A stretch of 64,000 bases of DNA from Styela clava (taxonomy: Eukaryota). Of this stretch, positions 27,191 to 64,000 are shown piece after piece (the first letter of the stretch is position 1; each line of letters starts with the position of its first letter). The DNA lies in contig NC_135263.1 in NCBI RefSeq assembly GCF_964204865.1, forward strand, positions 9,486,001-9,550,000. Reading direction: 5' to 3'. Position numbers and translations under genes: made by a program. The notes below the pieces were generated by a model that was not told where the DNA came from, made no database searches, and was given only the letters and a program-made list of their open reading frames with translations.

Positions 27191-29573
27191 TTTATTTCTC
27201 ACCGAAGGCCATTGCCAGATTGAAATGGCCCTGACCCAAAAATTGGGGCGGTATTGGGATGTGTTTTTTACGCTCGGCCAACTTTGGCAGTTTGGCGGGA
27301 AACGGTCGTCTGCCAAAGGGTTATAGCCTGGCAGGGACGTTTGTTTTTTGTTGTCGTTCTTGAAGAAGGAACTTCCACTACGTTAAACCAAAATATAAGC
27401 TGAAAATATGAAATATTGTGATTTTCATTTTGTAATATTTGTTAATTGAGTTATTTTGCGTAAATTTTTATATGAGCATTCATTTCCCACCAGCAATCCC
27501 CGAAGTGGGGAATTCCCCACCGGTTGGGAACCGCTGTGCTAGTTTCTAATTAATAACAGCTGCGATTTTGATAGACATTGATGTAAATTTGATAACCGGT
27601 CATAGTATTTTCTAAGTGATCATGGTGTAATTGAAATGAGGTCGTTACCCAGAAATTGTAGTTTGTCACACTGTTATATCTGTCATTCAGATGCTGATGA
27701 ACATTTTCTATGTGTCGCAATTAATTAAAGCAAAGAATAGACCGAAACTGATATAGCTGAGTCTGCAACAATATGGTCGACTGTTAGTTGTGATTATTAG
27801 CCTACTAGCAAAAAATAATGTGACCCAGTGTAAAACCAAATTATTTTTATAGCTATTAGAATTGATAAGATTGCACATAAATATGTCGGTAAATGAAATT
27901 TCATAAGGTGATCATCAGAAATGTATAAAAAAAAGAGTTGTTCATAACATGAGTTCTGATTTTATGAATTTTTCGTGTCGTGTTGATATATTTGATTTCT
28001 GCAAAAATATCCATAGAGGAATTTTAGAAAATGTTTCATTTACTGATTCAAGATAACATGGAACATTGTATCTCTAAAATCTGAACCGAAAACAAAATCT
28101 ATTGCAGGAAATGAGACTTGGGATTTATGATTATATTTATTACTACTTTATAAGTTGTGTACATGCATAATGATGGCCATAAGTCAGTAAGTAGACAGGA
28201 GTATCAAAGTGCTTTACAATTAGATGCTTTGCTATTGTACAGCTATTGTCACAAAATGTAGAAAAGGGTATAAGAATGAATATTGTGAATGTTTTTATTA
28301 TGAATGCTTTTGCTCAAAGAAATAATAGATGATGTTTTATAATTTATTGATAATGATAACATTGTAATGTATTCATTTACTAATTGTTGTTTTTGATTCT
28401 TACTCTAAACCTTTGTAAATTTATGATCTTTATATAATAACTTAAACACACACCTTATAATATTATCAGGATGGATAATGCAGTAATGTGCATCTTACTG
28501 GATTAACGTTTCATTGGAATGGATAATATTGATGCTAAATTCATGAAATATACGATCATGGGAATTACTATGTTCAGATGTTGGAGGTTGGAACTAATGT
28601 AACATGATGAATTTTCTTATATAGTGATTTAATACCTATGGTACCGTTTGACAAAGGATACAAGATGTCGGTGTGAAAAAGGGATCTGAGCAGCTGCACA
28701 AAATTACATTCAATTATTAACATAAACTCATTACTGATCGATGTTGAACAACAGAGCAAGAAATAGACAAACCGACTGCAGTGAATAAACTCTCATAGCA
28801 ATCCCCATGATTTGAGCGCTCTACTACCAGACCAGGAATAGATGCAACGCTTATATCAAGACTTGGTGATTTCCGGTAGATTTTATGAAATTCATGTGCA
28901 AAAATACAGTATCGCCAGCATATGCATTTTAAACAAGCCTAGTGATGACGATTCAGCTATTTATTGGATATTTCGTCTGTTACTCAAGCATTATCATGCA
29001 TTCTACTTTTTATTTATTTTGAGAAATAGTCAAAATCATATCAGCAAAGTTGTCAAAATAATCACATTGTTAGGGTGACAGGTACGGTACATTGTTTAAA
29101 ACAAAGCAATTTAAAATATAAAAAGTTTATCAGGTTGGTTAAGTTTTATTGTGAAAAGCGCAAGATTGTTATTCCTCCTGCAAATAATAGCCAGTGTGAC
29201 ACATTTGCAGAACAGCAATTACAAAATAGTGTTTATTTTCATTATGACTGGTATATTATGGTTTTAAAAGTTTTACAAATAGTGACTAATTGGGTAGATG
29301 ACAGCTGTTCAATGGTACAGTAGCAATTATCATAATTATTGATAAATGATCATGCTTTATGTGAATAATAAATGTGTGTTACTCATTCTTCAATAAATCA
29401 AGAAATTAAAAACTAATAATATCAGCACCCTGGTTTAGTTATAAAGGTTAGAGTGATGGAATATCATCCGAGTCTTGAATGCAGTTAGACTGTTGTTTGT
29501 GAGCTGGAAGAGTTTTGGTATGAAAAAAATAATAAGCAGTATTGGATTATAATTAGAACAAAGTACAGGAGAT

Positions 29574-30296
29574 ATGGCTAGTAGGCTGAAAACATGTTAC
29601 AGGAATGTTCTACCACCATCTTGCATTCCATTTACATCTGACAAAGGTAAAAAATATTTTAAGGAAGCTTTGCCAACGGGTCACATGAACTGCTACTTTG
29701 TGATCGGTTCTCAGTATAAAACACAAGAAGAACCTGGTGGTTATAGCGGTTTATCATCTCTTGTAATGGTTCTTAATGCATTTCATATTGACCCTGGAAT
29801 TGTTTGGAAATGGCCATTTCGTTGGTACCATGAGGATATGTTGCATTGCTGTACTCCTCTTGAGGAAATAAGGAAAAATGGCATTTCTATTGAGAACCTG
29901 CTGCGTTTGGCAAGATGTAATAACCTTGAAGGCCATGTTAAACGGTTTTCCGTTGAATCCAACATTGATGAATTTAGAGATGTAATCAAAAATGTAACAC
30001 TGAAAGAAGATGTAGCTATGATTTTATCATACAATCGTTCTACTCTTGGGCAGATAGGATCTGGCCATTTGTCACCAATTGGAGGCTACAATCCTATCGA
30101 AGACAAGGTTCTTATCTTGGATGTTGAAAGGTTTAAATATCCACCACATTGGGTTTGTTTGCATGATTTATGGAATGCCATTAAGAGCATAGATGAATCG
30201 ACAGGACTTCCTCATGGATATGTGAAACTGTGGAGGGCTGATACCATCATAGGGGAGAAATTATCCTGCAATTGTTTGGAAAGAAAGAAATTTTAA
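29574..30296 (+). CDS. Phytochelatin synthase-like protein, half-size (240 aa, catalytic domain only), catalytic Cys->Ser
   Basis: Intronless ORF with TQEEPGGYSGLSSLVMVLN, WKWPFRWYHEDML, SYNR, GSGHLSPIGGY and LDVERFKYPPHWV. Colinear with the N-terminal half of the downstream PCS. Confidence 0.88.
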   Translation: MASRLKTCYRNVLPPSCIPFTSDKGKKYFKEALPTGHMNCYFVIGSQYKTQEEPGGYSGLSSLVMVLNAFHIDPGIVWKWPFRWYHEDMLHCCTPLEEIRKNGISIENLLRLARCNNLEGHVKRFSVESNIDEFRDVIKNVTLKEDVAMILSYNRSTLGQIGSGHLSPIGGYNPIEDKVLILDVERFKYPPHWVCLHDLWNAIKSIDESTGLPHGYVKLWRADTIIGEKLSCNCLERKKF

Positions 30297-31238
30297 ACTG
30301 GATCTAGTAGATCTTAAACTATGAACATATTAGGTTTTTTGAAAATGAATTGAATAATTAGATTAGAGAGTCTAATTATTCAAACCTTTATTAAATGTTA
30401 GAAATTTCATTGAAAGTCTGGTTACCTTGCCTTGTTCATGTGTAACCTACAACCTCACTTTTGCATTTTATTATATTTATCAATTTTTATAAGAATCTAT
30501 TAATATGCGGGTTCGTACATAATTAGGTCATGATAAGTTATGGAACATAATATATTTCATCTTGTATGCTATTGTATATGACTGGGTGATTTGTAGTTTT
30601 TCAAATCTTGCCTTTCTGTTCTCAATGTTTTTATTATTATTTCCACCTCTGGTAAATATTTACAAGTTTCTGACACCAAACTGTTAATTGCAGTTCTTAC
30701 TACCTCAATCGAAAAATTTTAAAAAGCTAAATAATACAACAGCAATAAGAATTATTGATATTGGAAATGTGACTTGAAAATATCAGCAAGTGTTTCATGT
30801 GAATTTCCCAAGGATATTCTAAGTTATTTTTATACACTTCTGTAATGCCCAATTTAACTCTTAACTCAATCATAACTGTTATTTCCTATTCATGTCAACT
30901 AATCCGAACATTGTTCATGAATTAGATTCTAGCACGAAAATTCTACTTCCCTATTTATAATACACCAGGTGTTGACCTCTGTATTATTTGTATATATGTT
31001 TTCTGTTATAAGAGTTTGTAGTGGAGTGTGTAATGATTGACGAGTCGACATATGCCATTCTTGCATCATTTTTTATAATAACTGTTATTAAATTATTCAA
31101 AGTTATCGATTTCATTTATTCTATTTTTTAGGAAAATTTGAATTTGTTTCTAACTATAGTTGATACATATTCATGTAACTATGCTGAATAAAATAACATT
31201 TGCATGTGGCCAAGGTTGAACAGCCTGTGGTTTGAACT

Positions 31239-32663
31239 ATGATGGCTGCTACTGCGAAGAAAACATTTTACAGGCGAGTTTTGCCTGACATCTGTACCGC
31301 ATTTGCATCTGAAAGAGGCAAGCAATTGTTCAAAACTGCTCTTGCCACTGAGCACATGAACTGTTACTTTCCACTTGCTAGTCAGTTCAGAACACAAGAA
31401 GAACCAGCATACTGTGGTCTCTCATCTCTTGTCATGGTTCTTAATTCTCTTGCAGTCGATCCAGGTGTGGTTTGGAAAGGGGTTTTCCGTTGGTATCATG
31501 AAGACATGCTTGATTGTTGTTCTCCCCTAGAAGAAATTAGGAAAATAGGTGTTCCTATGGACAACCTGATGTGTTTGGCACTGTGTAATCAACTTGACGG
31601 GGAACTAAAACGGGTGTCTGACACTATGAATATTTCAGAATTCAGAGAGGATGTGAAAAATGCCACAAAAAGCACCAAAATAGCTATCATAGTATCATAT
31701 GGAAGAGGGGTTTTAGGTCAAACTGGCACAGGACATTTCTCTCCTATTGGTGGATACAATTCACAGGAAGATATGGTACTTGTTATGGATGTGGCAAGAT
31801 TCAAGTATCCTCCATATTGGGTTCCTTTGACAAAATTATGGGAAGCTATGCTGACTAGAGATGTAGAGACAGGACTTTATCGTGGATACATGGTTCTATG
31901 GAGGGCTGATGAAGGAGATATATCCAGCCAACCACTGTTAATTTTCAAAATTGCCCAAGGCCTGAATGCCTTTAAACCGATACTTAGAGGCTCTGGCAGT
32001 TTCTTTTTAAAAATCAAGTCATTTCTCATGGAGAGAGTAAAAGAACAAAATGACAAAGATATTCTGCGAATGATTATCACAACTTTGCTTGATCAGTCAT
32101 ACAAGCATACAGAGAGTAATGATGCAAGAGATTCTCCGAACCTTTTGTCAGTGCGAGCCACTGATGACGAAATAAAAAACTCATTTCCCAATCATGCTAA
32201 GGCAATAGGTAAGTTGATCGGGGCAATTAATGAAACACCTTTATATAAAAAAATTGTGCAGCTTTTCCCAAAAGGAATTTGTTGCAGGCAAGCGTTATTC
32301 ATAACCGAAAATGGAGAAGATATGGATGACTATTGCCAAAATAATGATTGTGTTATATGCTTGCCTCATTTTTTGACAGTATTTCTGTTATCTTTTCCGA
32401 CGGACGATGTAACACGTTACGAGGGTTGTAGCAAGAATTCAACAAAGAATACGAATGTTGTGGAAGGAACCTATCATGCCTTTTTGAAAAAAATGATCAA
32501 TTCACAACTGGTGGATGGTGGCTGTGGTTTGTGTGGAAATGTGACAAAAGAACAGGAAGAAGGTCATGTATTATTAGTCAACGAAATTACCCAACTGAGA
32601 AGACAGTTTGCTGCTCTGATTAATTTGGAGTTGCAATCAAATAAGTCCAGCCATGGATCATAG
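31239..32663 (+). CDS. PCS: Phytochelatin synthase (glutathione gamma-glutamylcysteinyltransferase), full length, 474 aa
   Basis: Intronless ORF with TQEEPAYCGL (Cys59), GTGHFSPIGGY (His) and MDVARFKYPPYWV (Asp). The C-terminal domain is Cys-rich (ICC, YCQNNDCVIC, GCGLCG) and ends in NEITQLRRQF. Confidence 0.95.
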   Translation: MMAATAKKTFYRRVLPDICTAFASERGKQLFKTALATEHMNCYFPLASQFRTQEEPAYCGLSSLVMVLNSLAVDPGVVWKGVFRWYHEDMLDCCSPLEEIRKIGVPMDNLMCLALCNQLDGELKRVSDTMNISEFREDVKNATKSTKIAIIVSYGRGVLGQTGTGHFSPIGGYNSQEDMVLVMDVARFKYPPYWVPLTKLWEAMLTRDVETGLYRGYMVLWRADEGDISSQPLLIFKIAQGLNAFKPILRGSGSFFLKIKSFLMERVKEQNDKDILRMIITTLLDQSYKHTESNDARDSPNLLSVRATDDEIKNSFPNHAKAIGKLIGAINETPLYKKIVQLFPKGICCRQALFITENGEDMDDYCQNNDCVICLPHFLTVFLLSFPTDDVTRYEGCSKNSTKNTNVVEGTYHAFLKKMINSQLVDGGCGLCGNVTKEQEEGHVLLVNEITQLRRQFAALINLELQSNKSSHGS

Positions 32664-36855: not shown

Positions 36856-39800
36856 TTAGGAGTAGCGGGGTATGAAAGACTGAGTATATACAGTAAAATG
36901 TTCATATTTTTGAGGATAGTCTTTTTGCCATCTAGGAGCATTTCGAGCACGATTCGAACGTCGGGGCATCCATTCAGGTGACGTGTCAACATCTATGTCA
37001 GCGTCCGTAGGCCATGAAGGATATTCCACTCCTGCTTTTGTTGGCGGGCTGTTAGGATTTGTGACTTCAGCTTGTGTTTTGTGATCGTTGCCTTCGATCG
37101 GTTCGTCGTGTTCCCCCGATGGTGTGACGTCGTTTCCAAAAAGGCTCTTTCCTCGTGTATTGTCTTCGAGCAGGTGGGAGCTTATAGAGGATGTCGATGA
37201 CGCATCGCGGTTGAGGTCCAATAACGGGTGTGTATTTACGCAGATTTCTGTTACGAAGTGTCACTCTTCCGGATCCGTCGACTTTTACGGCGTATCGATC
37301 AAATGGCCTAACTTTAATTATCAGTCCCGTTTTGTCCCATTTTTTCGGTTCTGGGCCGATCTGATTTTGAATCCTTACGTGATCTCCCTTTTTGTGTGTT
37401 CCGACCATCTTTCTGCCGATCTCATATGCCGGTTACGAAGAGCTTCCTCTTTGGCTGCCAAAGTTTCACGCCAAGTGTTGTGCGGTTTATATCTTCCAAG
37501 AAGAATAGGATGAAGTCTTTAATTGCGCGCCCGAACACGCACATTGCTGGTGACATTTTGGTGTCCGGGTCCGGTGCGTTTCGGTATTGCAGGATGGCCC
37601 GCTGAAAGGAGTCTGTGTCCAGTTCGCCGTTAGGCCCAGTGTTGTTGCAAATAAGTCGTTTGACAGTTTTTACTCCGTCTTCTGCACGGCAGTTACTGTG
37701 TGGGAATGCCACCGATGATAGGCTGTGATGTAAGCCCCATTCTTTCAAAAACTTCTGTGTTGCAACGGAGGTGAATTCAGGTCCTCCGTCAGAAGCCAGT
37801 TCATCTGCAATACCAAATGTCACGAATGTTCGTCGTAGGCTGCTGATAAGTTCTGTCGCACCACCCGCACCACCCTTTCGACTATTGGCCAATTGGAGTA
37901 GCGATCAACGATAACTAGGTAATTGACACCTTTGTAGTGGAAAAAATCGGCACAAATGCATTGAATCGGATAAGATGGTGTATATGGAGATGTAGGCGGA
38001 GCGCATGGCTGTGATGGAGCCATGCGATTGCATTCTCGGCACTTGTTGCGTGTTGTTAAGATCGCTGCTGTAATTCCTGGCCAGAACACGGATGCTTCTG
38101 CCCTTGAGGTCATTGATGAAACTCCTTGGTGTGCGGCGTGAAGGGCACGTAGAACGTCTCCGCGTAACGTGGGGGGGGGGGGGGGTTGGGTGACGATTCG
38201 GTCTTTGTAAATTATCACCCCGTCCACAGTGTAGAGGTCGTTCCTGAATCTGTAATACTCTCGTAGCGGTGTTGGAAGTTCAGTTCGCTTATCTGGCATT
38301 CCCGACTCAATTATTTCGACTAATTTTTTGTTCATGTGATCGTCGCTAGCAGTGGCCAACTTTACCTTTTCCCATGTGACAGTTTGCAGAGCAGCAATTG
38401 ATGAAGCTGCTGCCTCCATGATTGAGGTCTCAAAAGTGCTCTTGTGATTCACGGTAGTGCGAACTTTCTCCATTAAGGTTGATGAAAAAATCGTAGAAAG
38501 CTGAGAGGTTTCGTTCACAATCGATGCAATGTCGTCTGTAAGATGCATCATCTCAGGTTGCCCTGTGGGATGTCGAGAACAGCCGTCAGCAGCTCGGTGT
38601 TTTACGCCTGGAATGTGGATCATGCGGAACTTGTATCTTAGGGTCTTTTCCTTGAGATTACGGAGGCGTGTATTTGATATTTTGTCGAGTGACCTGTCGC
38701 CAAAAATTTTTAACAGCGGTTTGTGGTCTACGGCAATCACAAGGTCATCGCAGCCCAATACGAAGTAAATATGTTTGTCCAAGGCATCGACTACTGCAAG
38801 AGCATCTCCCTCAATTGGGGCGTAGCGTGATTCTGCACTATGAGTGAATCGACTGCCGACTAAAGTTGTTTTCCATCCACTGGGACAGCAAAACGGCTTT
38901 GAGTTTATAAGGGAAGAGCAATGCTTCTGAAAAAGCCAATACCCGATGTCGTTCTTCGACCAGTCGGTGGCGAGGCATGTTGGCTTCGTTTTGCCGAAAA
39001 TCTTTACCCCTTCTTCGATCTCTTTTGCTATGGTAGTTTTTGACTCCTCAAATATACTGTTCAGGTCGTTGTCCCAAACGAATTATGATCCGGGTTTCAG
39101 CAGTTCGCGGAATGGCAGCATGCGTTTCGTCATGCTGAATGCGTAAGACACTTGGTTAATTAATGATGGCGTTTAGGAATTCCGAGCAGGGCAATTTCGA
39201 GCATTTTCCATTGTTATTTCAAACCCAGCAAATTCTACGGTATCTTCGGCAAACACGAACTTTTCCGGATTAAGTGTGATGCCATGTCTCCCACAAATAT
39301 CCAGCCATTTGGCGGCTTGAAAGAAGCTTTCTTCTATGCTGTCGGACCAAAGTAGGGTGTCGTCAATGCATTTTGTTTTATTTGGAACGTCAGCCACAAT
39401 TTCATCGAATCTACGCGAGTATCCGTCTCCTGAAGCAATGTAGCCTTGTGGTGCAGTGCGGTACCGGTAGCGGCCCCAGGTTGTGATGAAGGTAGTCAAG
39501 TGCCGGTCTTCCTCTCGTATATGTACACTCTAATACCCGTTCCACGCATCAAACATGGTCTTCTTTTTGCCGCTTGGGACTGAGCGTGCTTGATGGAATG
39601 GGGACTGCGTGTGGTGGGTCTCCCTGGTGACGTAGGCGTTCAAGGGTTGCAGATCCACTGTGCGACGTGGTTTCCCATTCTTTTTTGCACAGACTACCAT
39701 TCGGTGACACCAAGTGACTGGATCGCCAATAGGAACTGTTTCTATCACGCCAAGTCTGACATCCTGGTCGAGTCCAGCCTTCACTTCGTCCTGCCAGTGC

Positions 39801-41609
39801 AATGGGACCGGTACAGGGGTGTGATGAGCAACTGGGTCGGCGTCTGATTTGATCATCAGTTTCATTGGCGGCCCTTCCATCATGGGCAAAGGCTGGTGTT
39901 CACACGTATTAAACGTGCTGGCTCGGTAGTGTTCAATGAAAAAGTTCTTAAGCTGTGCGAGGTTGTTTGTTGTGGCTAGAAATGGGAGTTTGGTGGGCAA
40001 CGTAGGAGGTAGTTGGCGGCGAGGACAATCACATTGCTTTTGTGTCTGGGCGCTTGTGTGTTTTGCTTCCCTGTTGCTATTTGCGACGGATTTGTCCAGT
40101 GAAGCCGCGCCAGACGCACAATAGATGCTTTGTTTTATGTCGCCTATTTTGGGAAAGTTGTTAGAGATCATTCCCAAGGCGGTGCAAGCTTCCCTGCTGA
40201 TGAACATTTTATCGGTGCTGTCAGTAACGTATGTTATATGCCTAGTTTCAACCGCATCGCCCCTTTCATCATTTCCAGATATTCGCAGGATCGCGGCGCC
40301 AATTATGTTGATACGTTTGTTGTTCGCTGCATGCATCTTCATAATGACTGGTATGAGATCCTTGTCCTTCAGTCCACTGCGGCGGATAATCTTGATGCTC
40401 GCAAGGCAACTTTGACATCCCGTGTCGGCCATTGCCGTGACTCTGGCGACACTGCTGTTGGCCTTTAGGCAGAATCCGAGCGCTTCGTAGTCCTCTTTGA
40501 CAGCTCTTATGGCAAGGCCTATGAATGGTTGAGGTTTCGAAGGCCTCTTGGTCCATATGTCATAGACATTGTCGTATAGATGGTGATCCAGTGATATGCT
40601 TTGGCTTGGCAATCGTTTGGAATTATTAGATCGGATTGTGCCAACGTTCGCGCTTACTGAACACATCGCATCAAAAACGGCTCCTTCGCATTCAGCATCT
40701 TTGTTTGGTTTGCTAGTTCCCGTTCTTCTGGAACTATTTTTCTTCCTGCACATGTGATCATGATGGTGTTTGAGACCGCAGTGTCCACAAGTGTGGTCAT
40801 ATGCCGTACATTCCGCTTGCCTGATTTTTGGGACTGCCCTAGCGCCATGGCCGGGTTCGCCGCAGTATGAGCATTTATTTTGAACATTCCTTTTATCTCG
40901 TCTGTAGGAACTGCTACGCGCAGCTTCCGCACCCATCGAGTCGAACAGGCGTGTAGCTGATCGTTTTCCAGATTCCTTAGTTTCCACGAATAGGAAGACT
41001 TCTTCGAGTGTCATGTCCTGATTTCTGTCGCCCAAAAGATCGAGTTGTATTTCCTGATCAGCTATGCCTCGCGTGAGCACGTCCCGTAAGATAGCATCTG
41101 TATAATTGACAGTTGCTTCGCAAGAAGGGCATTTAATCTGGAATTTGCATATTCCGGCTTGTCCACGTAGGCGGGCGCCAAAAGATCGGACAGTTTCATC
41201 TCTGTCCTGTCGCATGTTATGCAATGCCACTCTTGCAACCATTGTGTTTTCTTCGCGGACTGCCAGTAGTTTTATGGCAGCTACAACGTCATTTTCTGGT
41301 TTACCTGCCAGACTGCCACCCGCTGCCTGCGTGATGTCTTTTCGAAGGGCTTCGTCGCAGCATTCCAGTAGCTGCATTACTCTATCGCTACCCTCTATTT
41401 TCGTTGCGTCAACATATTCCTTCCATCTCGTTTCAAAGTATGCCCATTCCTCTGATGATCCAGCCATGGTGATTGTTGGCCTACGCACTTTTTCCACTTT
41501 TGCAACCGGCGATGAGTTGTGTGTGATGGAATGTGCTGTTACCTGTTATCAAGGCAGCCACGATGGCATCGCTTTGGTCTGGTGTTTGGTATGTACGGAC
41601 GACGGGCAT
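36856..41609 (-). pseudogene. gag-pol polyprotein, interrupted by several stops and frameshifts
   Basis: Gag Zn-knuckles (CSYCGEPGH; CGHCGLKHHHDHMC), protease MADTGCQS, RT (FDAWNGY; RYRYRTAPQG..KCIDD), RNase H (TDWSK..YAPIEGDAL..DHKPL), integrase (HAAHQG..C..C; CADFF; SDGGPEF; NCRAE). Likely start ATG at 41609, with a 7-nt insertion near 41540. Confidence 0.88.
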
Positions 41610-41684
41610 GATGATTGCAAGCACTGGTGCTAGTAAATAGTCACGTTAGCCAAATGTTGATAACGATAACTAGATATTAAGCTA

Positions 41685-55643: not shown

Positions 55644-57707
55644 TCATATCAAACCTTTGCGCTTCTTATAGTCCTCTAAATTCAATGACCGTTTTGGAAT
55701 GGATACTGACGAGGATAAACTCATGGCCTTCGGTGCTGCAAGAGGGTGAACATCTGAATTTGAAATTTGCAAATCAATTTTGATGTCAAAATTATGAGCA
55801 TCAAACAGACTTGCATCAGTTTTTGAAGTGCCTTCATCCGATTTTTCTTTGTTTCCTCCCCGTTTTGGAGCTTCGTATGACTTGTCAACACCACCGCCGT
55901 ATCTCCGTTCCATTTCCTTTATTAGGCGTTGAGTTTGATCTGAGTCCTCTGCGTTTGAAACTAGCACTGGTTTACAGCGACGTCTGGTGAAAGGATCAGC
56001 TGTCTTTGTGCGAATATTTTTCCATTCTTCTATACAGGCTTTCTCCTTTTCAAGATTAGAACTCTTGATCCTTTCATTAATGTATGTAATACCTGCAATA
56101 TTTTCTTGTCTTTTTTTATCAAGACTTTTAGCCCTATCTTCCAATTCTTCAAGTTCTTGTCCGACCTTAGCTTGTTCTTCTTGATCTCCTGTTTGTTCAG
56201 CCATCTCTCGATGCTTGAGCAAAAGAGTTTTCTGCATTGCATAATTTGTTGGATTTCGTTGAAATCTTTTCTTTTCCTTGATCATGCCATCAATATCTTT
56301 TTCTTGTATATTGTATTTCAATGCTTTCTGAATTTTTCCCAAACGGCTTTTCACTTCATCCAAAGTTGGCAGCTGCAATCCGGCAAGTCTCATAGTCTCT
56401 TTCCATTTAAAAAATTCATTTTCGGTAAAATCAGAATTTGAGACAAACTCAAGTCGAAACACTCTTTCTTGTTGGCCATGTCTGAGTCTAAGACCTCTAT
56501 TGGTTCTCAGTTTATCTAGCTGATAGACTTTGGCAGTTTCTACAACATCCATTATCTCAGCAACCCTGTATACAGGACGGCCGTTGTTGTTTCCAATGCC
56601 AATTCTTACAAAACAACCTGCGATGGTTTCTTTAAAAAAAGGTAATAAGAGCCATCGGCCCAGTTTGTATCTAGAAAGTCTGATTTTTTGAAGCTCCGCA
56701 ACAGACTCAATTTCTTGTGATCCTTTTGACTGCCGCTCAACATCTGAACTTGGTGATCTCCCACGACTACTTCCTTCACTGTCACTTAATGATGTGTCAG
56801 AGTCACTAGATGAGCCCAACGCTGTAGTCCGAGGTTTCGATGTTGATTCATCTTTAATATCATCATCATCTTCCTCATCATCAGTATATACTTCACTCAA
56901 TTTTAACTTTCTCTTCTTTGCGATTTCCTCTGCTCTAAGTTTTTTCCGTTCTCTTTCAGCTTTGAAACTTTCCAAAGTTTTTCTTTCCTTTTTATCCTCC
57001 ATCTTTTGACGACGATCACTTCGCATTGCGGCAAATGGGTCGTTACTGCTCTTAGATTCCTTCTTTTTTTCCACACTACCGCTCTTCTTTTTGGTCAATT
57101 TTTTCTTCTTCAATTTCCCATCTTGTAGCTTTGCAAGTCTTAATTTTTTCTCAATTTCGAATCGTTTCTGCAAAGCTTCACGTCTTTCAAGTCTGTTATA
57201 TAACTCTTGTTCTCTTTCTTTTTCAGTCATATTTTCGAGTGCTCTGCGGTCATCATCATCCCCAACCAATTCTTCATCATAGCCATCATCAAACTGTTTT
57301 CTCAGTTCTTCCTCGTCAAATTCACCAGAGGATCCACCACTCGATTCTGCACCACTTGAGCTGATTTCTCCCTCTTCCGGAGAGTTATCCGCAGCATTTG
57401 CATCACTATCATCTCCAGAATTTGACTCATCAGAAACCACTTTACCTTTTTCTTTCTTGCTACCTTTAGTTTTTGTTTTCTTCTTTGTTTTGGATTTTTT
57501 TGAACGCGCACTGACAGTCCATTCGTCATCATTATCAGATGTATCAGAACTATCACTCGAAGATGACATTTTTTTGGCTGGTGAGTCCTGTTGCGGCCCA
57601 CTGCTGCTACTTCCTTTTCGTTGCCTCTTGGCAGCTACTGGATCACTGCTGATTTCACCATCACTTTCGTCACTGTCTGAAACAATATTCTTTCGACGTT
57701 TTGACAT
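55644..57707 (-). CDS. RTF1: RNA polymerase-associated protein RTF1 (PAF1 complex, Plus3 domain)
   Basis: [22 protein letters not shown] (HMD), Plus3 [42 protein letters not shown] and C-terminal [14 protein letters not shown]. Intronless, with the likely start MSKRRK after an acceptor near 57744. Confidence 0.95.
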
Positions 57708-58188
57708 GATAATATCACAATTGAACTTTTTAGTAACTAATTTCTGAAGTAAAAATGAATTATTAATTAACTGAGGTTTAATGGGCCAGTATTTCATTCA
57801 GTACATTGATAATCGGCATCATCAATTCAGTCGCTATTAATTCTGTAATTATGCGCCTAGTCGGATGGTACCGGTATCAATTTTTTGGAACCTACAGCAC
57901 CAGCAGATTATAATATCGCGTAACCTAGTCCCCTGCAGCCTGTCTGAGCAACTCCACAACCTGAAACAAAACTCGATTCTCTGATCACCACAATAAAACT
58001 AACTGCTCCGGGCAAGCAAGGTCACAAATATCGGTACCGGTACCACCCGCCCAATCAGTCTGAACTTAACGAAACTTCCCCGCGAGATGGACAACACTAA
58101 AAGGCTGAAGGAAGAAACGGATGAAGTGGAGGAAAAACGGAAGTTGAAGTGTTCCCAAGGGTGAAAAATTGAAAAACACTAAAAGGCT

Positions 58189-60440
58189 GAACACTAAAAG
58201 GAAGAAGTGGATGAAATTTATTCCCACGAATAATGATGTGGTTGAAGTCACTAAAAAGCTGAACACTAAAAGGAAGAAGTTGATGAAATTTCTTCCGACG
58301 AATAATGAGGTGGTTGAAGTCACTAAAAAGCTGAACACTAAAAGGAAGAAGTTGATGAAATTTCTTCCGACGAATAATGAGGTGGTTGAAGTCACTAAAA
58401 AGCTGAACACTAAAAGGAAGAAGTTGATGAAATTTCTTCCGACGAATAATGAGGTGGTTGAAGTCACTAAAAAGCTGAACACTAAAAGGAAGAAGTGGAT
58501 GAAATTTTTTCCGACGAAAAATGAGGTAGTTGAAGTCACTTATAATCTGAACACTAAAAGGAAGGAGTGGATGAAATTTCTTCTGACGAAAAATTAGGTA
58601 GTTGAAGTCACTAAAAAGCTGAACACTAAAAGGAAGAAGTGGATGAAATTTTTTCCGACGAATAATGAGGTGGTTGAAGCCACTAAAAATCTGAACACAA
58701 AAAGGAAGAAGTGGATGAAATTTTTTCCGACGAAAAATGAGGTAGTTGAAGTCACTAAAAAGCTGAACACTAAAAGGAAGAAGTGGATGAAATTTCTTCC
58801 GACGAATATTGAGGTGGTTGAAGTCACTAAAAAGATGAACACTAAAAGGAAGAAGTGGATGAAATTTCTTCCGACGAATAGTGAGGTGGGTGAAATCACT
58901 AAAAAACTGAACACTAAAAGGAAGAAGTGGATGAAATTTCTTCCGACGAATAATGAGGTGGTTGAAGTCACTAAAAAGCTGAACACTAAAAGGAAGAAGT
59001 GGATGGAATTTCTTCCGACGAATAATGAGGTGGTTGAAGTCACTAAAAAGCTGAACACTAAAAGGAAGAAGTGGATGAAATTTCTTCCGACGAATAATGA
59101 GGTGGTTGAAGTCACTAAAAAGCTGAACACTAAAAGGAAGAAGTGGATGAAATTTCTTCCGACGAATAATGAGGTGGGTGAAGTCACTAAAAAGCTGAAA
59201 ACTAAAAGGAAGAAATGGATGAAATTTCTTCCGACGAATAATGAGGTGGGTGAAGTCACTAAAAAGCTGAACACTAAAAGGAAGAAGTGGATGAAATTTT
59301 TTCCGACGAAAAATGAGGTAGTTGAAGTCACTTATAATCTGAACACTAAAAGGAAGGAGTGGATGAAATTTCTTCTGACGAAAAATTAGGTAGTTGAAGT
59401 CACTAAAAAGCTGAACACTAAAAGGAAGAAGTGGATGAAATTTTTTCCGACGAATAATGAGGTGGTTGAAGCCACTAAAAATCTGAACACAAAAAGGAAG
59501 AAGTGGATGAAATTTTTTCCGACGAAAAATGAGGTAGTTGAAGTCACTAAAAAGCTGAACACTAAAAGGAAGAAGTGGATGAAATTTCTTCCGACGAATA
59601 TTGAGGTGGTTGAAGTCACTAAAAAGATGAACACTAAAAGGAAGAAGTGGATGAAATTTCTTCCGACGAATAGTGAGGTGGGTGAAATCACTAAAAAACT
59701 GAACACTAAAAGGAAGAAGTGGATGAAATTTCTTCCGACGAATAATGAGGTGGTTGAAGTCACTAAAAAGCTGAACACTAAAAGGAAGAAGTGGATGGAA
59801 TTTCTTCCGACGAATAATGAGGTGGTTGAAGTCACTAAAAAGCTGAACACTAAAAGGAAGAAGTGGATGAAATTTCTTCCGACGAATAATGAGGTGGTTG
59901 AAGTCACTAAAAAGCTGAACACTAAAAGGAAGAAGTGGATGAAATTTCTTCCGACGAATAATGAGGTGGGTGAAGTCACTAAAAAGCTGAAAACTAAAAG
60001 GAAGAAATGGATGAAATTTCTTCCGACGAATAATGAGGTGGGTGAAGTCACTAAAAAGCTGAACACTAAAAGGAAGAAGTGGATGAAATTTCTTCCGACG
60101 AATAATGAGGTGGGTGAAGTCACTAAAAAGCTGAAAACTAAAAGGAAGAAATGGATGAAATTTCTTCCGACGAATAATGAGGTGGGTGAAGTCACTAAAA
60201 AGCTGAAAACTAAAAGGAAGAAGTGGATGAAATTTCTTCCGACAAATAATGAGGTGGGTGAAGTCACTAAAAAGCTGAACACTAAAAGGAAGAAATGGAT
60301 GAAATTTCTTCCGACGAATAATGAGGTGGGTGAAGTCACTAAAAAGCTGAACGCTAAAAGGAAGAAATGGATGAAATTTTTTCCGACGAATAATGAGGTG
60401 GCGGAGGTCACTGAAAAGCTAAACACTATAAGGAAGAAGT
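58189..60440 (+). repeat. 72-bp tandem array, ~31 copies (left arm), with a 792-bp (11-unit) higher-order duplication
   Basis: Unit GAACACTAAAAGGAAGAAGTGGATGAAATTTCTTCCGACGAATAATGAGGTGGTTGAAGTCACTAAAAAGCT. The variant pattern starting at 58643 recurs at 59435. Confidence 0.95.
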
Positions 60441-61088
60441 ACGTTAGGGTTAGATGATATTTTGTCCTATCGATTTTGAGGCGGTTGAAGCCACTAAAAT
60501 ACCGAAAATTAGGAGAGTTAAATAGCCAAAACATATCCCGACGGAAGTGAGATTGGATGAAGACCCTGACAGCGGACTGATGAGTAGGCATGCCACTTTT
60601 AAATTTATGAATTGAATCGATTCAAATCGCAATTTTTTTCGAATCTGATTTACGCGATTCGAAAGAAAGAGAGCCGTTTAGCGAAGAAAAACAAACACTC
60701 CAAATAACATCGATTGCCAGACGGGAATGTAAATGAATTTTTCGTTATTTACTTTTATTGATCTGCCTTCATTCATTTTCATGTTCAGCGCAACACACCC
60801 TGATCATCACTCGAGATGCTGACGTGCTGTGTGGGTAATTAATTTCCTTCAATCTGTCAGTTGAGTATTCCACTGAATGACCTAAGTTTCTATCACACGC
60901 AAATTTAAATGGATCGTATACCCGAAAGTTCGTTGCAATTTTGTTAAAAATATGCAACAGCACACCTTCTCTGCGACTAAGTTATGGTACGCTTTGACAT
61001 GAATTGATAAACGATCAGATACCGACTTCTAGAAAACATTTAATTTTGATTGAAATTTAATTTAAACTCCGTTGAAATTGAAATATTG

Positions 61089-61147
61089 GTACTACTGAAG
61101 TACGCGCACCAAGATGTCGCACAACCTGATCCCTAACCTCGTACACC
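61089..61147. mobile_element. Half copy of MITE family A, truncated by a hAT-type end (CAGTGATTTTCAACC at 61148)
   Basis: CTGAAGTACGCGCACCAAGATGTCGCACAACCTGATCCCTAACCTCGTACAC followed by CAGTG. Confidence 0.65.
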
Positions 61148-62194
61148 AGTGATTTTCAACCTTTTCTGTATCGCGGAACACTTATTTTATTCTAAAATTG
61201 TGACGGAATACCAAATGAGATTTTTGGAAATAAACTATATTATGCAATTAACTGACATCGATCATTTCGGAATAAAATAAATTAACGAAATTAATAATAG
61301 CTTGTCAATTTCAGCTGGAAAAGACGTTACACATATTCCGATTCAGAGCTAGGAACAGAAATGGTATTTTAATGTAATATCTGGGCCTGTTTCGATAAGT
61401 TTCAATATTTTATTCTGGCTGGAATTAAATTTAGAGAGACAAACACGCAGCTCTTTCTCGGTGACTCTCAATTTTCCGTGTTTTTTATACTCTTATGGCG
61501 GCCAAGAAAAGGGTGCGCAAAATCGAATATTTTTTTCGAATCAAATGATTCGAATATTCTTAACAAATACCGAATAGTCCAATACCGAATATTTTTTATA
61601 CGCAGCATGTCCAGAACGTCGCCGCCATGGATCGCCGTTGTATTTTGTAAATACGAAAATAGGTATCAAAAATTAATAATAATCGCGCAGTTAACCACAC
61701 ATCTATGTACATAGATTGCCGTGGTATTGTGCCCGAATATAATTAATTTTTGATTCCGTATTTCATTCCTTGAACTTAATATCTGTTTTTATAAATTTTG
61801 CAAGCAGTTCACGCACGAAGGCTTTGAATAATGATGTATTAGTCAAATCGAAGTCCTGTTAGACCACTGGTTCTCAACCAATGGGCCATGGGCCACTGGT
61901 AAGCCTCAGAGGCATTTTGAGGTGGGCCACAAACATATTATAAATTACAAGGTTTGCTGATTGGAAAAATTGATTTGATAACAAAATCAGCTTCACGCGT
62001 CTTGAAAAACAAGATATCTATTTGCAAAACATGCCTCGCCGTAACCACCCATTGTGGCGCAACATACCCATTATACGGCAGGAACAGCTAGATATGAATA
62101 TATATATATATATATTGTCACATAAATACGAACAAAACAAACATTAAATTATCCAATTCCTAATATATTGAATTTTCAAGTATTCCTCATCCTC

Positions 62195-62815
62195 ACTATC
62201 CGTCGGAAGAAATTTCATCCACTTCTTCCTTTTACTGTTCAGCTTTTTAGTGACTTCAAACACCTCATTATTCGTCGGAAGAAATTTCATCCACTTCTTC
62301 CTTTTACTGTTCATCTTTTTAGTGACTTCAAACACCGTATTATTCGTCGGAAGAAACTTCATTCACTTCTTCCTTTTAGTATACAGTTTTTAGTGACTTC
62401 AACCACCTCATTATTCGTCGGAAATTTTTTTATCCACTTCTCCCATTTAGTGTTCAGCTTTCTAGTGACTTCAACCACCTCATTATTCGTCGGAAGAAAT
62501 TTCATCTACTTCTTCCTTTTAGTGTTCATCTTTTCAGTGACTTCAACCACCTCATTATTCGTCGGAATAAATTTCATCCACTTCTTCCTTTTAGTTTTCA
62601 GCTGTTTAGTGACTTCAACCACCTCATTATTCGTCGGAAGAAATTTCATCCACTTCTCCCTTTTAGTGTTTAGCTTTTTAGTGACTTCAACCACCTCATT
62701 ATTCGTCGGAAAAAATTTCCTCCACCTCTTCCTTTCAGTGTTCAGCTTTTTAGTGACTTCAGCCACCTAACTACCCGTCGGAAGAAATTTCATCCACTTC
62801 TTACTTTTAGTGTTC
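62195..62815 (-). repeat. 72-bp tandem array, ~8-9 copies (right arm, inverted)
   Basis: Reverse complement of the same unit, somewhat more diverged. Confidence 0.93.
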
Positions 62816-64000
62816 AGCCTTTTAGTGTTTTTCAATTTTTCACCTTTGGGAACACTTCAACTTCCGTTTTCCCTCCACTTCATCCGTTTCTTCCTTCAGC
62901 CTTTTAGTGTTGTCCCCGCGAGATACTGTCATCAGTATTCAGTATATCACTTGTATACCTTATTCATTCAAAACCCATCCTACGCGCGAAAAATAAAAAG
63001 GACATAAACAAAACGATTTTAACATTAGCTCTTATGAGGATTGTGGTCACCAGAGCAGAAATTTGCATTTTATGTAGTTTTCTAGTTATCTTTCATTGTA
63101 GACTTGTGCAGTTTCGAAGATGAAATATTTTTCGTATCTTTTTTGATCTTTTTATAATGATGAACATAGTCGAGATTTTCGATAATCGTTCATTAAAATT
63201 TTAACGGGCGTGATTCCCAGACTTGACTTCAAATCTTTTCATGATGAATAGATTTTTATGGTTTTCCTCTAATTGAACCATTTTCCCCACCTCAATTACC
63301 ACATGTTTGAATTCCCGAGCAGACTTCCTCTGATTTGTTATCAGCTGTTAATTTACTGCTTTACTTGTTAGATGGTCCTCTTAGTAAAAAAACTAGAAAA
63401 AAAACAGTAACTTAACAATGCTTAAATGCTGGACCTGCTGGAACTTAGACCCCAACTACCAAGTTTTGGCCATTTTTAACCGAATCCAAAATATCCCTAA
63501 AATAGTCAACCCTCCCTTCAAGGAGAATCTTTTTTTACTTGGTAATTGTTCAAATACCTTAATAAACTGTAAATCTTGATAGCGAAAATGGCCCCTCTGT
63601 CAAAATCAGCGTTGAAAATTTTTTATGATAACAAGGGTCGGGGAAACGTCCATAGAACAAGAGAGCAACGCTCAAATATATGAACACGTGGACGAGAGCG
63701 AAGCAGTCTTTACCTTTGACAATGTAATGTGCAATGTATATGTGCGTAAAAATGAGTCAGCTAACAGTCTAAAAATTTTGAGCGAGGATGATTTGGATAG
63801 AATCCGATGAATCTTTTGTATGATAACTTTGCTTATAATTATGAGGTCATGTGTAATTTTCTTATACTAATGTAACTATGTCAATTGTTAAAAAATGTGT
63901 AAAGTTTGCCATACTTACGTCACAGATAAAACTAGTTATATTTCCTGCAATATATGCCATGAATGAATGGGTTCACTTTACATGCTCTAAGCTAAGTTTG

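What the first reader, a model, noticed from the sequence alone, without database searches (positions are those of the whole stretch)
29574..32663. Tandem phytochelatin synthase pair: an active enzyme plus a half-size Cys->Ser pseudoenzyme
Seen: the upstream copy has TQEEPGGYSGL (AGC Ser58 at 29745-29747, plus a 1-residue insertion) where the downstream copy has TQEEPAYCGL (TGT Cys59 at 31413-31415). It keeps the oxyanion Gln, His, Asp and the SYxR/RFKY substrate residues, and lacks the Cys-rich C-terminal domain. Its ORF is uninterrupted despite heavy nucleotide divergence from the paralog. Established: PCS uses a papain-like Cys-His-Asp triad (AtPCS1 C56/H162/D180), substituting the Cys abolishes activity, and half-size PCS is typical of cyanobacteria. 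Inference: a maintained glutathione-binding pseudoenzyme, a heterodimeric regulator, or a Ser-nucleophile variant, forming an undescribed two-gene metal/GSH module in an animal.
Basis: partly seen in the sequence, partly recalled or inferred. Interest (0 to 1): 0.75.

Follow-up and report, generated by a model that had tools for sequence, protein, structure and literature searches.

The report
Sea-squirt phytochelatin synthase paralog with serine
Next to its normal phytochelatin synthase gene, the sea squirt Styela clava keeps a short, divergent, probably transcribed copy whose essential catalytic cysteine is a serine, so it most likely no longer makes metal-binding peptides and has some other, untested role.

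Summary
Window 29574-30296 (+) is an intact 240-aa phytochelatin synthase (PCS, PF05023) gene. AGC (Ser58) sits where 161 of 163 full-length relatives and 80 of 80 metagenome relatives have Cys. Window 31239-32663 (+) is a 474-aa full PCS with Cys59.

The genome is Styela clava; RefSeq already models the short gene as "PCS-like". Ser58 is also in that RefSeq allele and in contigs of two other studies. Raw reads did not cover the codon.

New here:
- An unnamed 239-aa orthologue (P0002, 76% identical) shares the half size, the 1-residue insertion, a C-terminal CxC and six changes at family-conserved sites.
- P0002 keeps Cys but has lost the invariant Gly before the catalytic His.
- The two orthologues differ at 2 of 54 conserved sites against 48 of 161 others (p=2.5e-5). 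Those two are exactly these catalytic-centre residues.
- The fold model is confident (pLDDT 92).
- RNA-like contigs cover the gene.

My reading: a maintained, remodelled paralogue, not a decaying copy. Canonical PC synthesis is very probably lost in S. clava. Whether it is a ligand-binding pseudoenzyme or a Ser hydrolase is unresolved, as is any "module" with its neighbour. No paper and no earlier scan note describes it.

The parts
29574..30296 (+). Short PCS paralogue: 240-aa intronless ORF made of the papain-like PCS domain plus a ~20-aa tail
   Evidence: ORF. PF05023 E 4.9e-73. AlphaFold2 pLDDT 92.3, pTM 0.89. Foldseek best hits are Nostoc PCS Alr0975, TM 0.90, rmsd 1.7-1.8 A.
29745..29747 (+). 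AGC, Ser58, at the position of the catalytic Cys nucleophile
   Evidence: DNA read. Column count: 161 Cys, 2 Ser (self and own allele), 3 gaps, of 166. No difference at this place in the contigs of X3 and X12.
29736..29741 (+). Gly55-Gly56: the loop before the nucleophile is one residue longer than in other PCS (B-loop 1 of the NsPCS/AtPCS1 nomenclature)
   Evidence: Gap in the pairwise alignment. The same insertion is in orthologue P0002. It is an insert state in the profile alignment.
29904..29906 (+). Arg111 in place of the first Cys of the conserved CxxxC motif (equivalent to AtPCS1 Cys109)
   Evidence: shared with P0002. The conserved Cys set is named in PMC11314372 (passages).
30066..30071 (+). 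His165 (catalytic, kept) followed by Leu166 (family consensus Phe, 91%)
30120..30128 (+). Asp183 (catalytic, kept), Val184, Glu185; the family has Ala at 185 in 100% of the reference set
   Evidence: Glu is shared with P0002.
30213..30215 (+). His214 in place of a 99%-conserved Arg (aligned with Arg232 of Nostoc PCS)
   Evidence: shared with P0002. The role of Arg232 in binding the gamma-Glu carboxylate is recalled from Vivares 2005, which I could not read.
30267..30275 (+). Cys232-Asn-Cys234 in the short C-terminal tail; P0002 has C-E-C-C at the same place
   Evidence: Alignment; DNA.
30297..31238 (+). 942-bp spacer between the two genes. It is covered by RNA-like contigs up to about 31064, and the contigs of the long gene start at 31148
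   Evidence: table 8; sequence.
31239..32663 (+). Full-length PCS: 474-aa intronless ORF with Cys59 (TGT 31413-31415), His and Asp, and a Cys-containing C-terminal half
   Evidence: It keeps 53 of 54 family-conserved sites.

Best explanation
The short gene is a maintained, probably transcribed paralogue of phytochelatin synthase. It arose by duplication of the full-length gene in the ancestry of Styela clava and at least one other species.

Shown: after the duplication it lost or never had the C-terminal domain. It evolved about 2.6 times faster than the full-length copy. It changed residues around the active site: a longer loop before the nucleophile, Phe->Leu after the catalytic His, Ala->Glu two residues after the catalytic Asp, and Arg->His at the conserved Arg of the RG motif. 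Later, in the S. clava line, the Cys nucleophile became Ser. In the other species the invariant Gly before the His became Asn.

Inferred: because each orthologue has separately changed an otherwise invariant catalytic-centre residue while the rest of the conserved core is preserved, the ancestral short protein had already stopped depending on canonical gamma-glutamylcysteine transpeptidation. In S. clava it very probably makes no phytochelatins. Most likely it works by binding, or only very slowly turning over, glutathione, a glutathione-like ligand or a conjugate. That would make it a pseudoenzyme or sensor/buffer in thiol or metal metabolism. A role alongside the neighbouring full-length enzyme is possible but not shown.
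For: The gene is real and intact.

Ser58 is seen in 4 sources: the window, RefSeq P0001, and the contigs of X3 and X12.

Orthologue P0002 is 239 aa and 76% identical (77% over the 215 domain columns). It has the same insertion, the same short tail with CxC, and the same six derived residues at conserved sites, but keeps Cys.

In the tree, (short, P0002) has support 100/100. It lies inside a 98/95 clade with the S. clava long copy, the chromosome-4 copy and P0016. The stem is 0.47 and the tips are 0.22 (S. clava) against 0.18 (P0002), so there is no extra acceleration after Cys->Ser.

Short and P0002 differ at 2 of 54 family-conserved sites against 48 of 161 other sites (Fisher p=2.5e-5). The 2 are the nucleophile (S. 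clava) and the Gly before His (P0002). For comparison, long vs P0016 is 0 of 54, and long vs the chromosome-4 copy is 5 of 54.

Pairwise dN/dS of short vs long is 0.16-0.27, with dS saturated.

X12 differs from the window at 3 places (no indels) in the 723-nt CDS against 11 places (7 SNPs, 4 indels) in 642 nt of flanks (p=0.028). The CDS rate of 0.41% equals that of the long gene, 0.42%. Two of the 3 variable CDS places seen across X3, X12 and X16 are synonymous. The one non-synonymous change, D88N, and the RefSeq P95S give residues that other PCS carry at those sites.

The AlphaFold2 model has pLDDT 92.3 and superposes on Nostoc PCS at TM 0.90.

RNA-like contigs: X3 gives a 1102-nt contig at 29447-30548, depth 8, against 56 for the long gene. 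X12 gives depth ~105 against ~92, with none beyond 32807. The 9 runs of this organism (A) that were guessed to be RNA, from 3 studies, each hold at least 72% of the gene's words.

Precedent: AtPCS1 C56S makes no PC and does not deglycinate GS-bimane, yet complements a defence phenotype (bioRxiv 10.1101/568113, passages). A Nostoc PCS chain with Ser at the nucleophile is deposited 'bound to glutathione' (6tjl).
Against: No biochemical data exist.

No DNA of the orthologue was available, so there is no branch-specific dN/dS. Polarised to the S. clava branch alone, the site-class test has no power (1 of 54 against 9 of 161, p=0.46). A recent loss of function in S. clava therefore cannot be excluded.

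Only one orthologue was found. It is a single predicted protein from one unnamed assembly.

The runs taken as RNA are only guessed to be RNA. In X3 the gene's depth (8) is only 1.3-3 times that of its flanks (2.6-6.3). In X12 the depth is about equal over both genes and the spacer.

The RefSeq allele carries 3 amino-acid differences in 240 residues, against 2 in 417 for the long gene. This could mean somewhat relaxed constraint.

Papain-fold enzymes with engineered Cys->Ser can keep some activity (PMC10318531), so 'non-catalytic' is not shown.
Confidence: 0.55

Rival explanations
1. It is an active enzyme that uses Ser58-His165-Asp183 as a serine-type triad on the papain fold, for example a hydrolase or transpeptidase for glutathione, a conjugate or another gamma-glutamyl compound. 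The shared remodelling of the pocket (Ala185Glu, Arg214His, longer loop) adapted the site before the thiol was exchanged.
For: His, Asp, the oxyanion Gln and the second-site residues are all kept (residue list from PMC3855540). The gene looks constrained. Ala->Glu adds a negative charge and Arg->His removes a positive one next to the triad in sequence. According to passages of PMC10318531, papain-like enzymes may keep activity with Cys->Ser when the active site is more negative. The same passages say that bleomycin hydrolase and congopain Cys->Ser mutants keep measurable activity, and that several papain-like families have a conserved Ser.
Against: AtPCS1 C56S is inactive for both PC synthesis and GS-bimane deglycination. 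The orthologue with the same pocket still has Cys, and it has lost the Gly before His, which does not look like tuning for catalysis. The net charge of the domain is ordinary: +1, the 65th percentile of 160. I could not measure 3-D distances of Glu185 and His214 to the triad.
Confidence: 0.2
2. It is a duplicate that has recently lost function in S. clava and is starting to decay. The ORF is still open only because too little time has passed.
For: The nucleophile is gone. The short clade evolves faster than the long gene: path 0.69 against 0.26 from the duplication node. There are 3 amino-acid differences between two S. clava alleles. The test on the S. clava branch alone has no power. Expression is not proven.
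Against: The half-size form is old and is kept in a second species. The S. clava tip is not clearly longer than the orthologue's, 0.22 against 0.18. Only 1 of 54 conserved sites changed on the S. clava line. There are no indels or stops in the CDS in 4 sources, while the flanks carry 4 indels in X12. The fold prediction is confident. The chromosome-4 copy, by contrast, does show losses at conserved sites (5 of 54) and a stranded C-terminal remnant.
Confidence: 0.15
3. It is a dedicated partner of the neighbouring full-length PCS, as a heterodimeric regulator or co-transcribed module. The dead subunit would modulate activity or metal activation of the live one.
For: The genes lie in tandem on the same strand, 942 bp apart. 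In X12 the depth is about equal over both genes and most of the spacer. Nostoc PCS crystallises as a dimer (recalled, not checked here).
Against: Adjacency is what a tandem duplication leaves behind, so it is not evidence of joint function. In X3 the two genes differ 7-fold in depth, and contigs of the long gene start on their own at 31148. No tool here predicts complexes. The gene order in the other species is unknown.
Confidence: 0.08
4. The Ser codon is an assembly or sequencing error.
For: Raw reads (X16) did not cover the codon.
Against: The same Ser is in the independent RefSeq allele and in contigs from two other studies whose differences are fully listed.
Confidence: 0.02

Closest known systems
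Eukaryotic phytochelatin synthase (AtPCS1 type; MEROPS C83, Pfam PF05023). The animal examples, C. elegans PCS-1, Schistosoma PCS and Ciona PCS, are named from recall or from search listings only.
   Same: Same domain over its whole length. Same His, Asp and oxyanion Gln, and the same second-substrate residues: equivalents of AtPCS1 Q50, E52, Y55, R152, Q157, F184, K185 and Y186. The closest named relatives are animal (mollusc) PCS at about 50% identity.
   Different: Ser instead of the acyl-enzyme Cys. No C-terminal Cys-rich domain. One extra residue before the nucleophile. Six substitutions at sites conserved in at least 90% of the family.
AtPCS1 C56S, the engineered Cys->Ser mutant
   Same: The same substitution at the same residue.
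   Different: It is made in the laboratory, in a full-length plant enzyme. It is inactive for PC synthesis and GS-bimane cleavage but still complements the pen4 defence phenotype (bioRxiv 10.1101/568113, passages). Here the change is natural and sits in an already remodelled pocket.
Nostoc sp. PCC 7120 Alr0975 (NsPCS), the 'primitive' half-size PCS, including entry 6tjl with Ser at the nucleophile, deposited as bound to glutathione
   Same: Half-size architecture. The predicted fold superposes at TM 0.90, rmsd 1.7-1.8 A, with 28-30% identity. The 6tjl chain carries Ser where the short copy does.
   Different: NsPCS is bacterial, natively has Cys and mainly hydrolyses GSH. The Styela protein is a secondary truncation of an animal full-length PCS (tree), not a relative of the cyanobacterial half-size forms.
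Natural Cys->Ser members of the papain superfamily: menin, DUF2145, DUF2272, DUF3750 and APC5867 from PMC10318531; silicatein and Plasmodium SERA5 from recall
   Same: Papain-like fold with Ser in place of Cys beside a retained His and third residue. Function is either non-proteolytic or unresolved.
   Different: Those are whole families with a conserved Ser. Here the Ser is known in a single species inside a family that otherwise always has Cys.

Membership tests
Phytochelatin synthase domain family (Pfam PF05023 / MEROPS C83) | Significant full-length match to the PF05023 profile | tested here: met
   E 4.9e-73, 245 bits against a cut-off of 24.9, profile positions 2-210 of 210.
Phytochelatin synthase domain family (Pfam PF05023 / MEROPS C83) | Papain-like fold of the solved PCS (Alr0975) | tested here: met
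   AlphaFold2 pLDDT 92.3. Foldseek hits 6th5, 6tho, 6tjl, 2btw and 2bu3 with E about 1e-20, TM 0.85-0.91 by target length (0.90-0.91 in 7 of the 9 chains). This is a prediction, not a solved structure.
Catalytically competent phytochelatin synthase (gamma-glutamylcysteine dipeptidyl transpeptidase, EC 2.3.2.15) | Cys nucleophile of the Cys-His-Asp triad (AtPCS1 Cys56) | tested here: not met
   Ser58, AGC at 29745-29747. AtPCS1 C56S lacks PC synthesis in vitro and in vivo.
Catalytically competent phytochelatin synthase (gamma-glutamylcysteine dipeptidyl transpeptidase, EC 2.3.2.15) | His and Asp of the triad, and the oxyanion Gln | tested here: met
   His165 and Asp183 are invariant columns; Gln51 is kept.
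Catalytically competent phytochelatin synthase (gamma-glutamylcysteine dipeptidyl transpeptidase, EC 2.3.2.15) | Second-substrate cavity residues (AtPCS1 Q50, E52, Y55, R152, Q157, F184, K185, Y186) | tested here: met
   Q51, E53, Y57, R155, Q160, F187, K188 and Y189 are present. The loop that carries E53 and Y57 is one residue longer, though.
Catalytically competent phytochelatin synthase (gamma-glutamylcysteine dipeptidyl transpeptidase, EC 2.3.2.15) | Conserved Arg of the C-terminal RG motif (NsPCS Arg232; its role in binding the gamma-Glu carboxylate is recalled) | tested here: not met
   His214 in both the short copy and P0002; Arg in 99% of the 160 reference sequences.
Catalytically competent phytochelatin synthase (gamma-glutamylcysteine dipeptidyl transpeptidase, EC 2.3.2.15) | PC synthesis or GSH / GS-conjugate deglycination activity | not testable with these tools
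   Needs recombinant protein assays.
Pseudoenzyme (a catalytically dead homologue kept by selection) | Loss of an essential catalytic residue | tested here: met
   Cys->Ser in S. clava; the invariant Gly before His is Asn in the orthologue.
Pseudoenzyme (a catalytically dead homologue kept by selection) | Purifying selection after the loss | tested here: inconclusive
   Both orthologue lineages together: 2 of 54 against 48 of 161, p=2.5e-5. S. clava branch alone: 1 of 54 against 9 of 161, p=0.46. Polymorphism: 3 differences in the CDS against 11 in the flanks, p=0.028.
Pseudoenzyme (a catalytically dead homologue kept by selection) | Expression as RNA and protein | tested here: inconclusive
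   Contigs of runs that are only guessed to be RNA cover the gene in 3 studies. There are no stranded raw RNA reads and no proteomics.

The most novel reading that the evidence does not exclude
The short protein may be the first natural serine-nucleophile member of the phytochelatin synthase family. Its pocket (Ala185Glu, Arg214His, a lengthened loop) would have been rebuilt first, allowing the thiol to be swapped for a hydroxyl. The result would be an oxidation- and metal-insensitive hydrolase or transpeptidase for glutathione-like compounds in a metal-accumulating sea squirt. Alternatively it may be a dead subunit that tunes the neighbouring enzyme.
Probability: 0.2. Interest if true: 0.7.

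Novelty: new variant of a known kind. Interest (0 to 1): 0.45.

Why it matters
Phytochelatin synthases are treated as strict Cys-His-Asp enzymes, and every other family member I could inspect has the Cys. A copy with Ser that is kept by selection would mean one of two things. Either the PCS fold has a second, non-catalytic job in animals, as the Arabidopsis C56S complementation result hints for plants. Or the fold can run on a serine.

Either outcome bears on how animals that lack a clear need for phytochelatins use these genes. It also bears on thiol and metal handling in an invasive, metal-exposed ascidian.

It is also a clean natural pair for pseudoenzyme evolution: two orthologues that each broke a different invariant catalytic-centre residue. 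The finding is testable with simple recombinant assays. It is not a new kind of system.

Tried and rejected
As substitutes I used a site-class test on proteins, branch lengths and polymorphism.

2. I looked for more orthologues. A second word-based search with P0002 found none. A metagenome scan gave 80 loci, the best at 53% identity, none of the short clade. The exhaustive representative search returns one protein per 50% cluster, so the short clade is hidden under P0016.

3. Run X14 (organism B) was laid in the hope of seeing codon 58 in a relative. It held only a 242-nt, depth-2 piece that carries X12's own variant, which is most likely carry-over within that study. It also held organism B's own long-type PCS contig. 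This says nothing about codon 58.

4. Raw reads of X16 gave too little depth to confirm AGC.

5. I tested the idea that the domain as a whole is more negatively charged. It is not: net +1, the 65th percentile.

6. I considered a retrocopy origin for the chromosome-4 copy and rejected it. Homology includes about 230 bp upstream of the start codon and stops after codon ~230, and a 34-aa C-terminal remnant lies downstream. This fits a DNA-level duplicate with deletions.

7. I considered horizontal transfer, because the genes are intronless. There is no support: the nearest named relatives are mollusc PCS.

8. Vivares et al. 2005 (the NsPCS structure paper) is not held, so the roles of Arg232 and Asp225 are recalled, not read.

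9. Literature searches for a natural Cys-less PCS gave the following. 'phytochelatin synthase' + 'pseudoenzyme': 0 papers. + 'Styela': 1 irrelevant paper. + 'C70S' + 'Nostoc': 0 papers. + 'catalytic cysteine' + 'paralog': 2 papers, neither on this. Supplementary files were not requested. Alignments in the supplements of PMC11314372 (220 algal and cyanobacterial PCS) might contain non-Cys variants that I could not see.

10. The first MAFFT run of all 166 sequences timed out. It was replaced by a profile alignment.


Full report
WHAT IS THERE. The window is G000:C18:9486001-9550000. A protein 99% identical to the short ORF is named by RefSeq/UniRef 'glutathione gamma-glutamylcysteinyltransferase-like', Styela clava, so the genome is that of this solitary ascidian.

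Two uninterrupted ORFs lie in tandem on the + strand, 942 bp apart: 29574-30296 (240 aa) and 31239-32663 (474 aa). Both match Pfam PF05023 (phytochelatin synthase) over the whole 210-position profile, at 4.9e-73 and 3.1e-84. They are 60% identical over 222 residues and 65.4% identical as aligned codons.

Codon 58 of the short gene is AGC at 29745-29747. It aligns with Cys59 (TGT, 31413-31415) of the long gene and with the nucleophile of the solved Nostoc enzyme.

IS THE SERINE REAL AND UNUSUAL? The RefSeq protein P0001 is a different allele (three amino-acid differences: P95S, G227E, S231F) and also has Ser. One read-laying run gave these results:
- In run X3 a 1102-nt contig covers 29447-30548 with only two differences, at 30062 and 30454.
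- In run X12 a 1981-nt contig covers 29000-30541 with 27 differences, all listed, none at 29745-29747.
- X3 and X12 belong to two further studies.

In a profile alignment of 166 sequences (163 database proteins then held plus my three translations), the nucleophile column holds 161 Cys. Three fragments lack the column. The two Ser are this gene and its own allele. A metagenome scan added 80 loci, and 80 of 80 have Cys. Only the best 150 of 3654 family hits in the representative library could be seen, so rarer non-Cys variants elsewhere are not excluded.

THE KEY NEW FACT: AN ORTHOLOGUE WITH CYS. P0002 is 239 aa, comes from one unnamed assembly, and is 76% identical. It shares with the short copy the extra residue before the nucleophile (EPGGY), the short tail with a CxC, and the absence of a C-terminal domain. 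It reads GGYCGL, so it keeps Cys.

In a maximum-likelihood tree, (short, P0002) is supported 100/100. The tree used the 45 nearest of the 163 sufficiently complete rows (of 166 aligned), minus the three allelic rows P0001, P0003 and P0004, which leaves 42 rows and 215 columns. The pair lies in a 98/95 clade with the S. clava long copy, a third S. clava copy and the unnamed P0016. The half-size gene therefore predates the split of the two species, and Cys->Ser came later, on the S. clava side.

The G000 genome holds only three PCS loci, so P0002 is not a S. clava paralogue. A second homology search with P0002 found no further member of this clade.

REMODELLED POCKET. I took 160 reference sequences, leaving out the short clade and the fragments. 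They define 54 sites with at least 90% identity and at least 90% occupancy, out of 215 profile columns.
- The long copy keeps 53 of 54.
- The short copy and P0002 each keep 46.
- Six of the departures are shared by the short copy and P0002 but not by the long copy: L44I, L70F, C111R (the first Cys of the conserved CxxxC; PMC11314372, passages), F166L (next to His165), A185E (two residues after Asp183; Ala in 100% of references) and R214H (Arg in 99%).
- R214 aligns with Arg232 of the Nostoc enzyme. I recall, but could not re-read, that Arg232 binds the gamma-Glu carboxylate of the acyl intermediate.
- Private departures: Cys58Ser in S. clava, and in P0002 the 100%-conserved Gly before the catalytic His, which is Asn.

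The residues that PMC3855540 (passages) assigns to the second-substrate cavity are all present.

IS IT MAINTAINED?
(a) Short and P0002 differ at 2 of 54 conserved sites against 48 of 161 others (Fisher p=2.5e-5). The two are exactly the nucleophile and the Gly before His. A pair of presumably working genes, long vs P0016, gives 0 of 54 against 59 of 161. Long vs the chromosome-4 copy gives 5 of 54 against 28 of 160.
(b) Tip lengths are 0.22 (S. clava) and 0.18 (P0002). The acceleration lies on the shared stem (0.47), not after the Cys->Ser change.
(c) Pairwise dN/dS of short vs long is 0.16-0.27, but dS is saturated at 1.2-1.9.
(d) Against the window, X12 has 3 SNPs and no indel in the 723-nt CDS, against 7 SNPs and 4 indels in 642 nt of flanks (p=0.028 with indels, 0.20 for SNPs alone). 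The CDS rate (0.41%) equals that of the long gene (0.42%).
(e) Of the three variable CDS places seen in reads, two are synonymous (K24, S163) and one is D88N. D88N and the RefSeq P95S fall on variable columns where Asn and Ser occur in other PCS.
(f) AlphaFold2 with an 87-row alignment gives pLDDT 92.3 and pTM 0.89. Only the first ~10 and last ~20 residues are less confident. Foldseek puts the nine Nostoc PCS chains first, with TM up to 0.91 and rmsd 1.7-2.0 A for eight of the nine (6.3 A for 6tho_A).

Points against:
- Polarised to the S. clava branch alone, the site test has no power (1 of 54 against 9 of 161, p=0.46; 30 of the 50 differences could not be polarised).
- The short gene shows three amino-acid differences between two alleles.

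A very recent loss of function therefore cannot be excluded.

IS IT EXPRESSED? The look-up of sequencing runs listed 14 holders. Nine runs of the same organism, from three studies, are 'RNA? (a guess)', with 53-79 Mb of contigs, and hold 72-96% of the gene's words.

In X3 the depths are uneven in the way RNA is: 8 on the short gene, 2.6-6.3 around it, 56 on the long gene. In X12 depth is about 105 on the short gene, about 105 and then 53 in the spacer, 92-102 on the long gene, and 0 beyond 32807. This fits transcription of both genes, with a long 3' extension of the short gene's RNA to about 31064 and a separate start of the long gene's RNA at 31148. But the library type is not on record. Contigs show neither strand nor ends, and breaks near 30541-30548 are allelic bubbles, not RNA ends. 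I rate expression as probable, not shown.

No splice joint was seen in either gene.

HOW IT MOST LIKELY WORKS. Published work shows that AtPCS1 C56S makes no phytochelatin in vitro or in planta and does not deglycinate GS-bimane, yet still rescues the pen4 defence and indole-glucosinolate phenotype (bioRxiv 10.1101/568113, passages). A Nostoc PCS chain with Ser at the nucleophile is deposited as 'bound to glutathione' (6tjl; sequence, title).

From these and the evolutionary pattern I infer that the short lineage gave up canonical transpeptidation early. Each orthologue has since damaged a different invariant catalytic-centre residue while the fold core stayed fixed. I infer that the S. clava protein binds, or only very slowly turns over, glutathione or a related ligand. 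The CxC tail could be a minimal metal site; this is speculation.

The main rival is a true serine enzyme. Passages of PMC10318531 report that some papain-like enzymes keep activity after Cys->Ser. They also cite Gisdon et al. for the idea that this needs a more negative active site. Ala185Glu and Arg214His go in that direction, but the domain's net charge is ordinary, and I could not measure distances in the model.

A partner role with the neighbouring full-length enzyme rests on adjacency only.

COMPARISON AND NOVELTY. The protein belongs to the PCS domain family (sequence and predicted fold) but fails two features of a competent PCS: the Cys, and the Arg of the RG motif. It resembles the cyanobacterial half-size enzymes only in architecture. 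The tree shows a secondary truncation of an animal gene.

The gene is already modelled in RefSeq. I found no paper on Styela PCS or on a natural Cys-less PCS (supplements not seen). I class it as a new variant of a known kind, of moderate interest.

OTHER COPIES AND CONTEXT. A third PCS gene lies at G000:C4:15226761-15227375 (-). Its ORF is 233 aa and it has Cys. It is 86.5% identical in DNA to the long gene, with dS 0.38 and omega 0.24. It is a DNA-level duplicate that includes about 230 bp upstream of the start codon and loses homology after codon ~230. A 34-aa remnant of the C-terminal domain lies just downstream, and it has 5 changes at conserved sites relative to the long gene (6 of the 54 depart from the family consensus). 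It is the better candidate for a decaying copy.

S. clava has thus produced half-size PCS genes twice.

Noticed in passing
G000:C4:15226589-15227375 (-) = L002:1456-2157 (-) and just downstream: A third PCS gene: 233 aa, Cys kept, equal to RefSeq P0004 apart from allelic differences. It is a partial DNA-level duplicate of the long gene that includes about 230 bp of upstream sequence. It has 5 changes at family-conserved sites relative to the long gene (6 of the 54 depart from the family consensus) and a stranded 34-aa remnant of the C-terminal domain. It may be a decaying or independently truncated copy.
   Followed up: partly
window 32250-32420 (inside the long gene): The RefSeq model P0003 (417 aa) lacks 57 internal residues of the 474-aa ORF, as if an intron were spliced out. 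The RNA-like contigs of X3 and X12 are colinear with the genome there and show no joint. The unspliced 474-aa form may therefore be the main product.
   Followed up: partly
window 31132-31162: A ~30-nt stretch upstream of the long gene (GAAAATTTGAATTTGTTTCTAACTATAGTT) is almost identical in the chromosome-4 copy, while its surroundings have diverged. Contigs of X3 and both alleles of X12 all start at 31148, inside it. It may be a core promoter, transcription start or trans-splice acceptor region. Part of the sequence just before it resembles the Ciona spliced leader as I recall it; this was not tested.
   Followed up: no
window 30297-31064: The spacer downstream of the short gene is covered by RNA-like contigs at about the depth of the short gene (X12 ~105 then 53; X3 6.3 then 4.6). 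This suggests a ~770-nt 3' UTR, or read-through towards the long gene. Coverage is missing at 31065-31147 in both runs.
   Followed up: no
window 30595-30627 and after 32687: Indel polymorphisms in S. clava: a 31-nt deletion allele in the spacer (X12, two bubble contigs at depths 73.7 and 31.2), and a 26-nt insertion after 32687 in the long gene's 3' flank (X12).
   Followed up: no
run X14 (organism B), pieces on window 29568-29809: A depth-2 contig identical to S. clava, carrying X12's own variant 29645 A>G, sits in a run labelled as another organism of the same study. It looks like carry-over between libraries, not a shared gene.
   Followed up: no
window 36856-41633: Long ORFs on the - strand (320 and 655 aa) in a GC-rich block (GC 0.42-0.48 against ~0.34 around it).
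   Followed up: no
window 56001-60000: GC and AT skew switch sharply, -0.25 then +0.31. This fits the foldback element with satellite arms noted earlier at 58080-62924.
   Followed up: no
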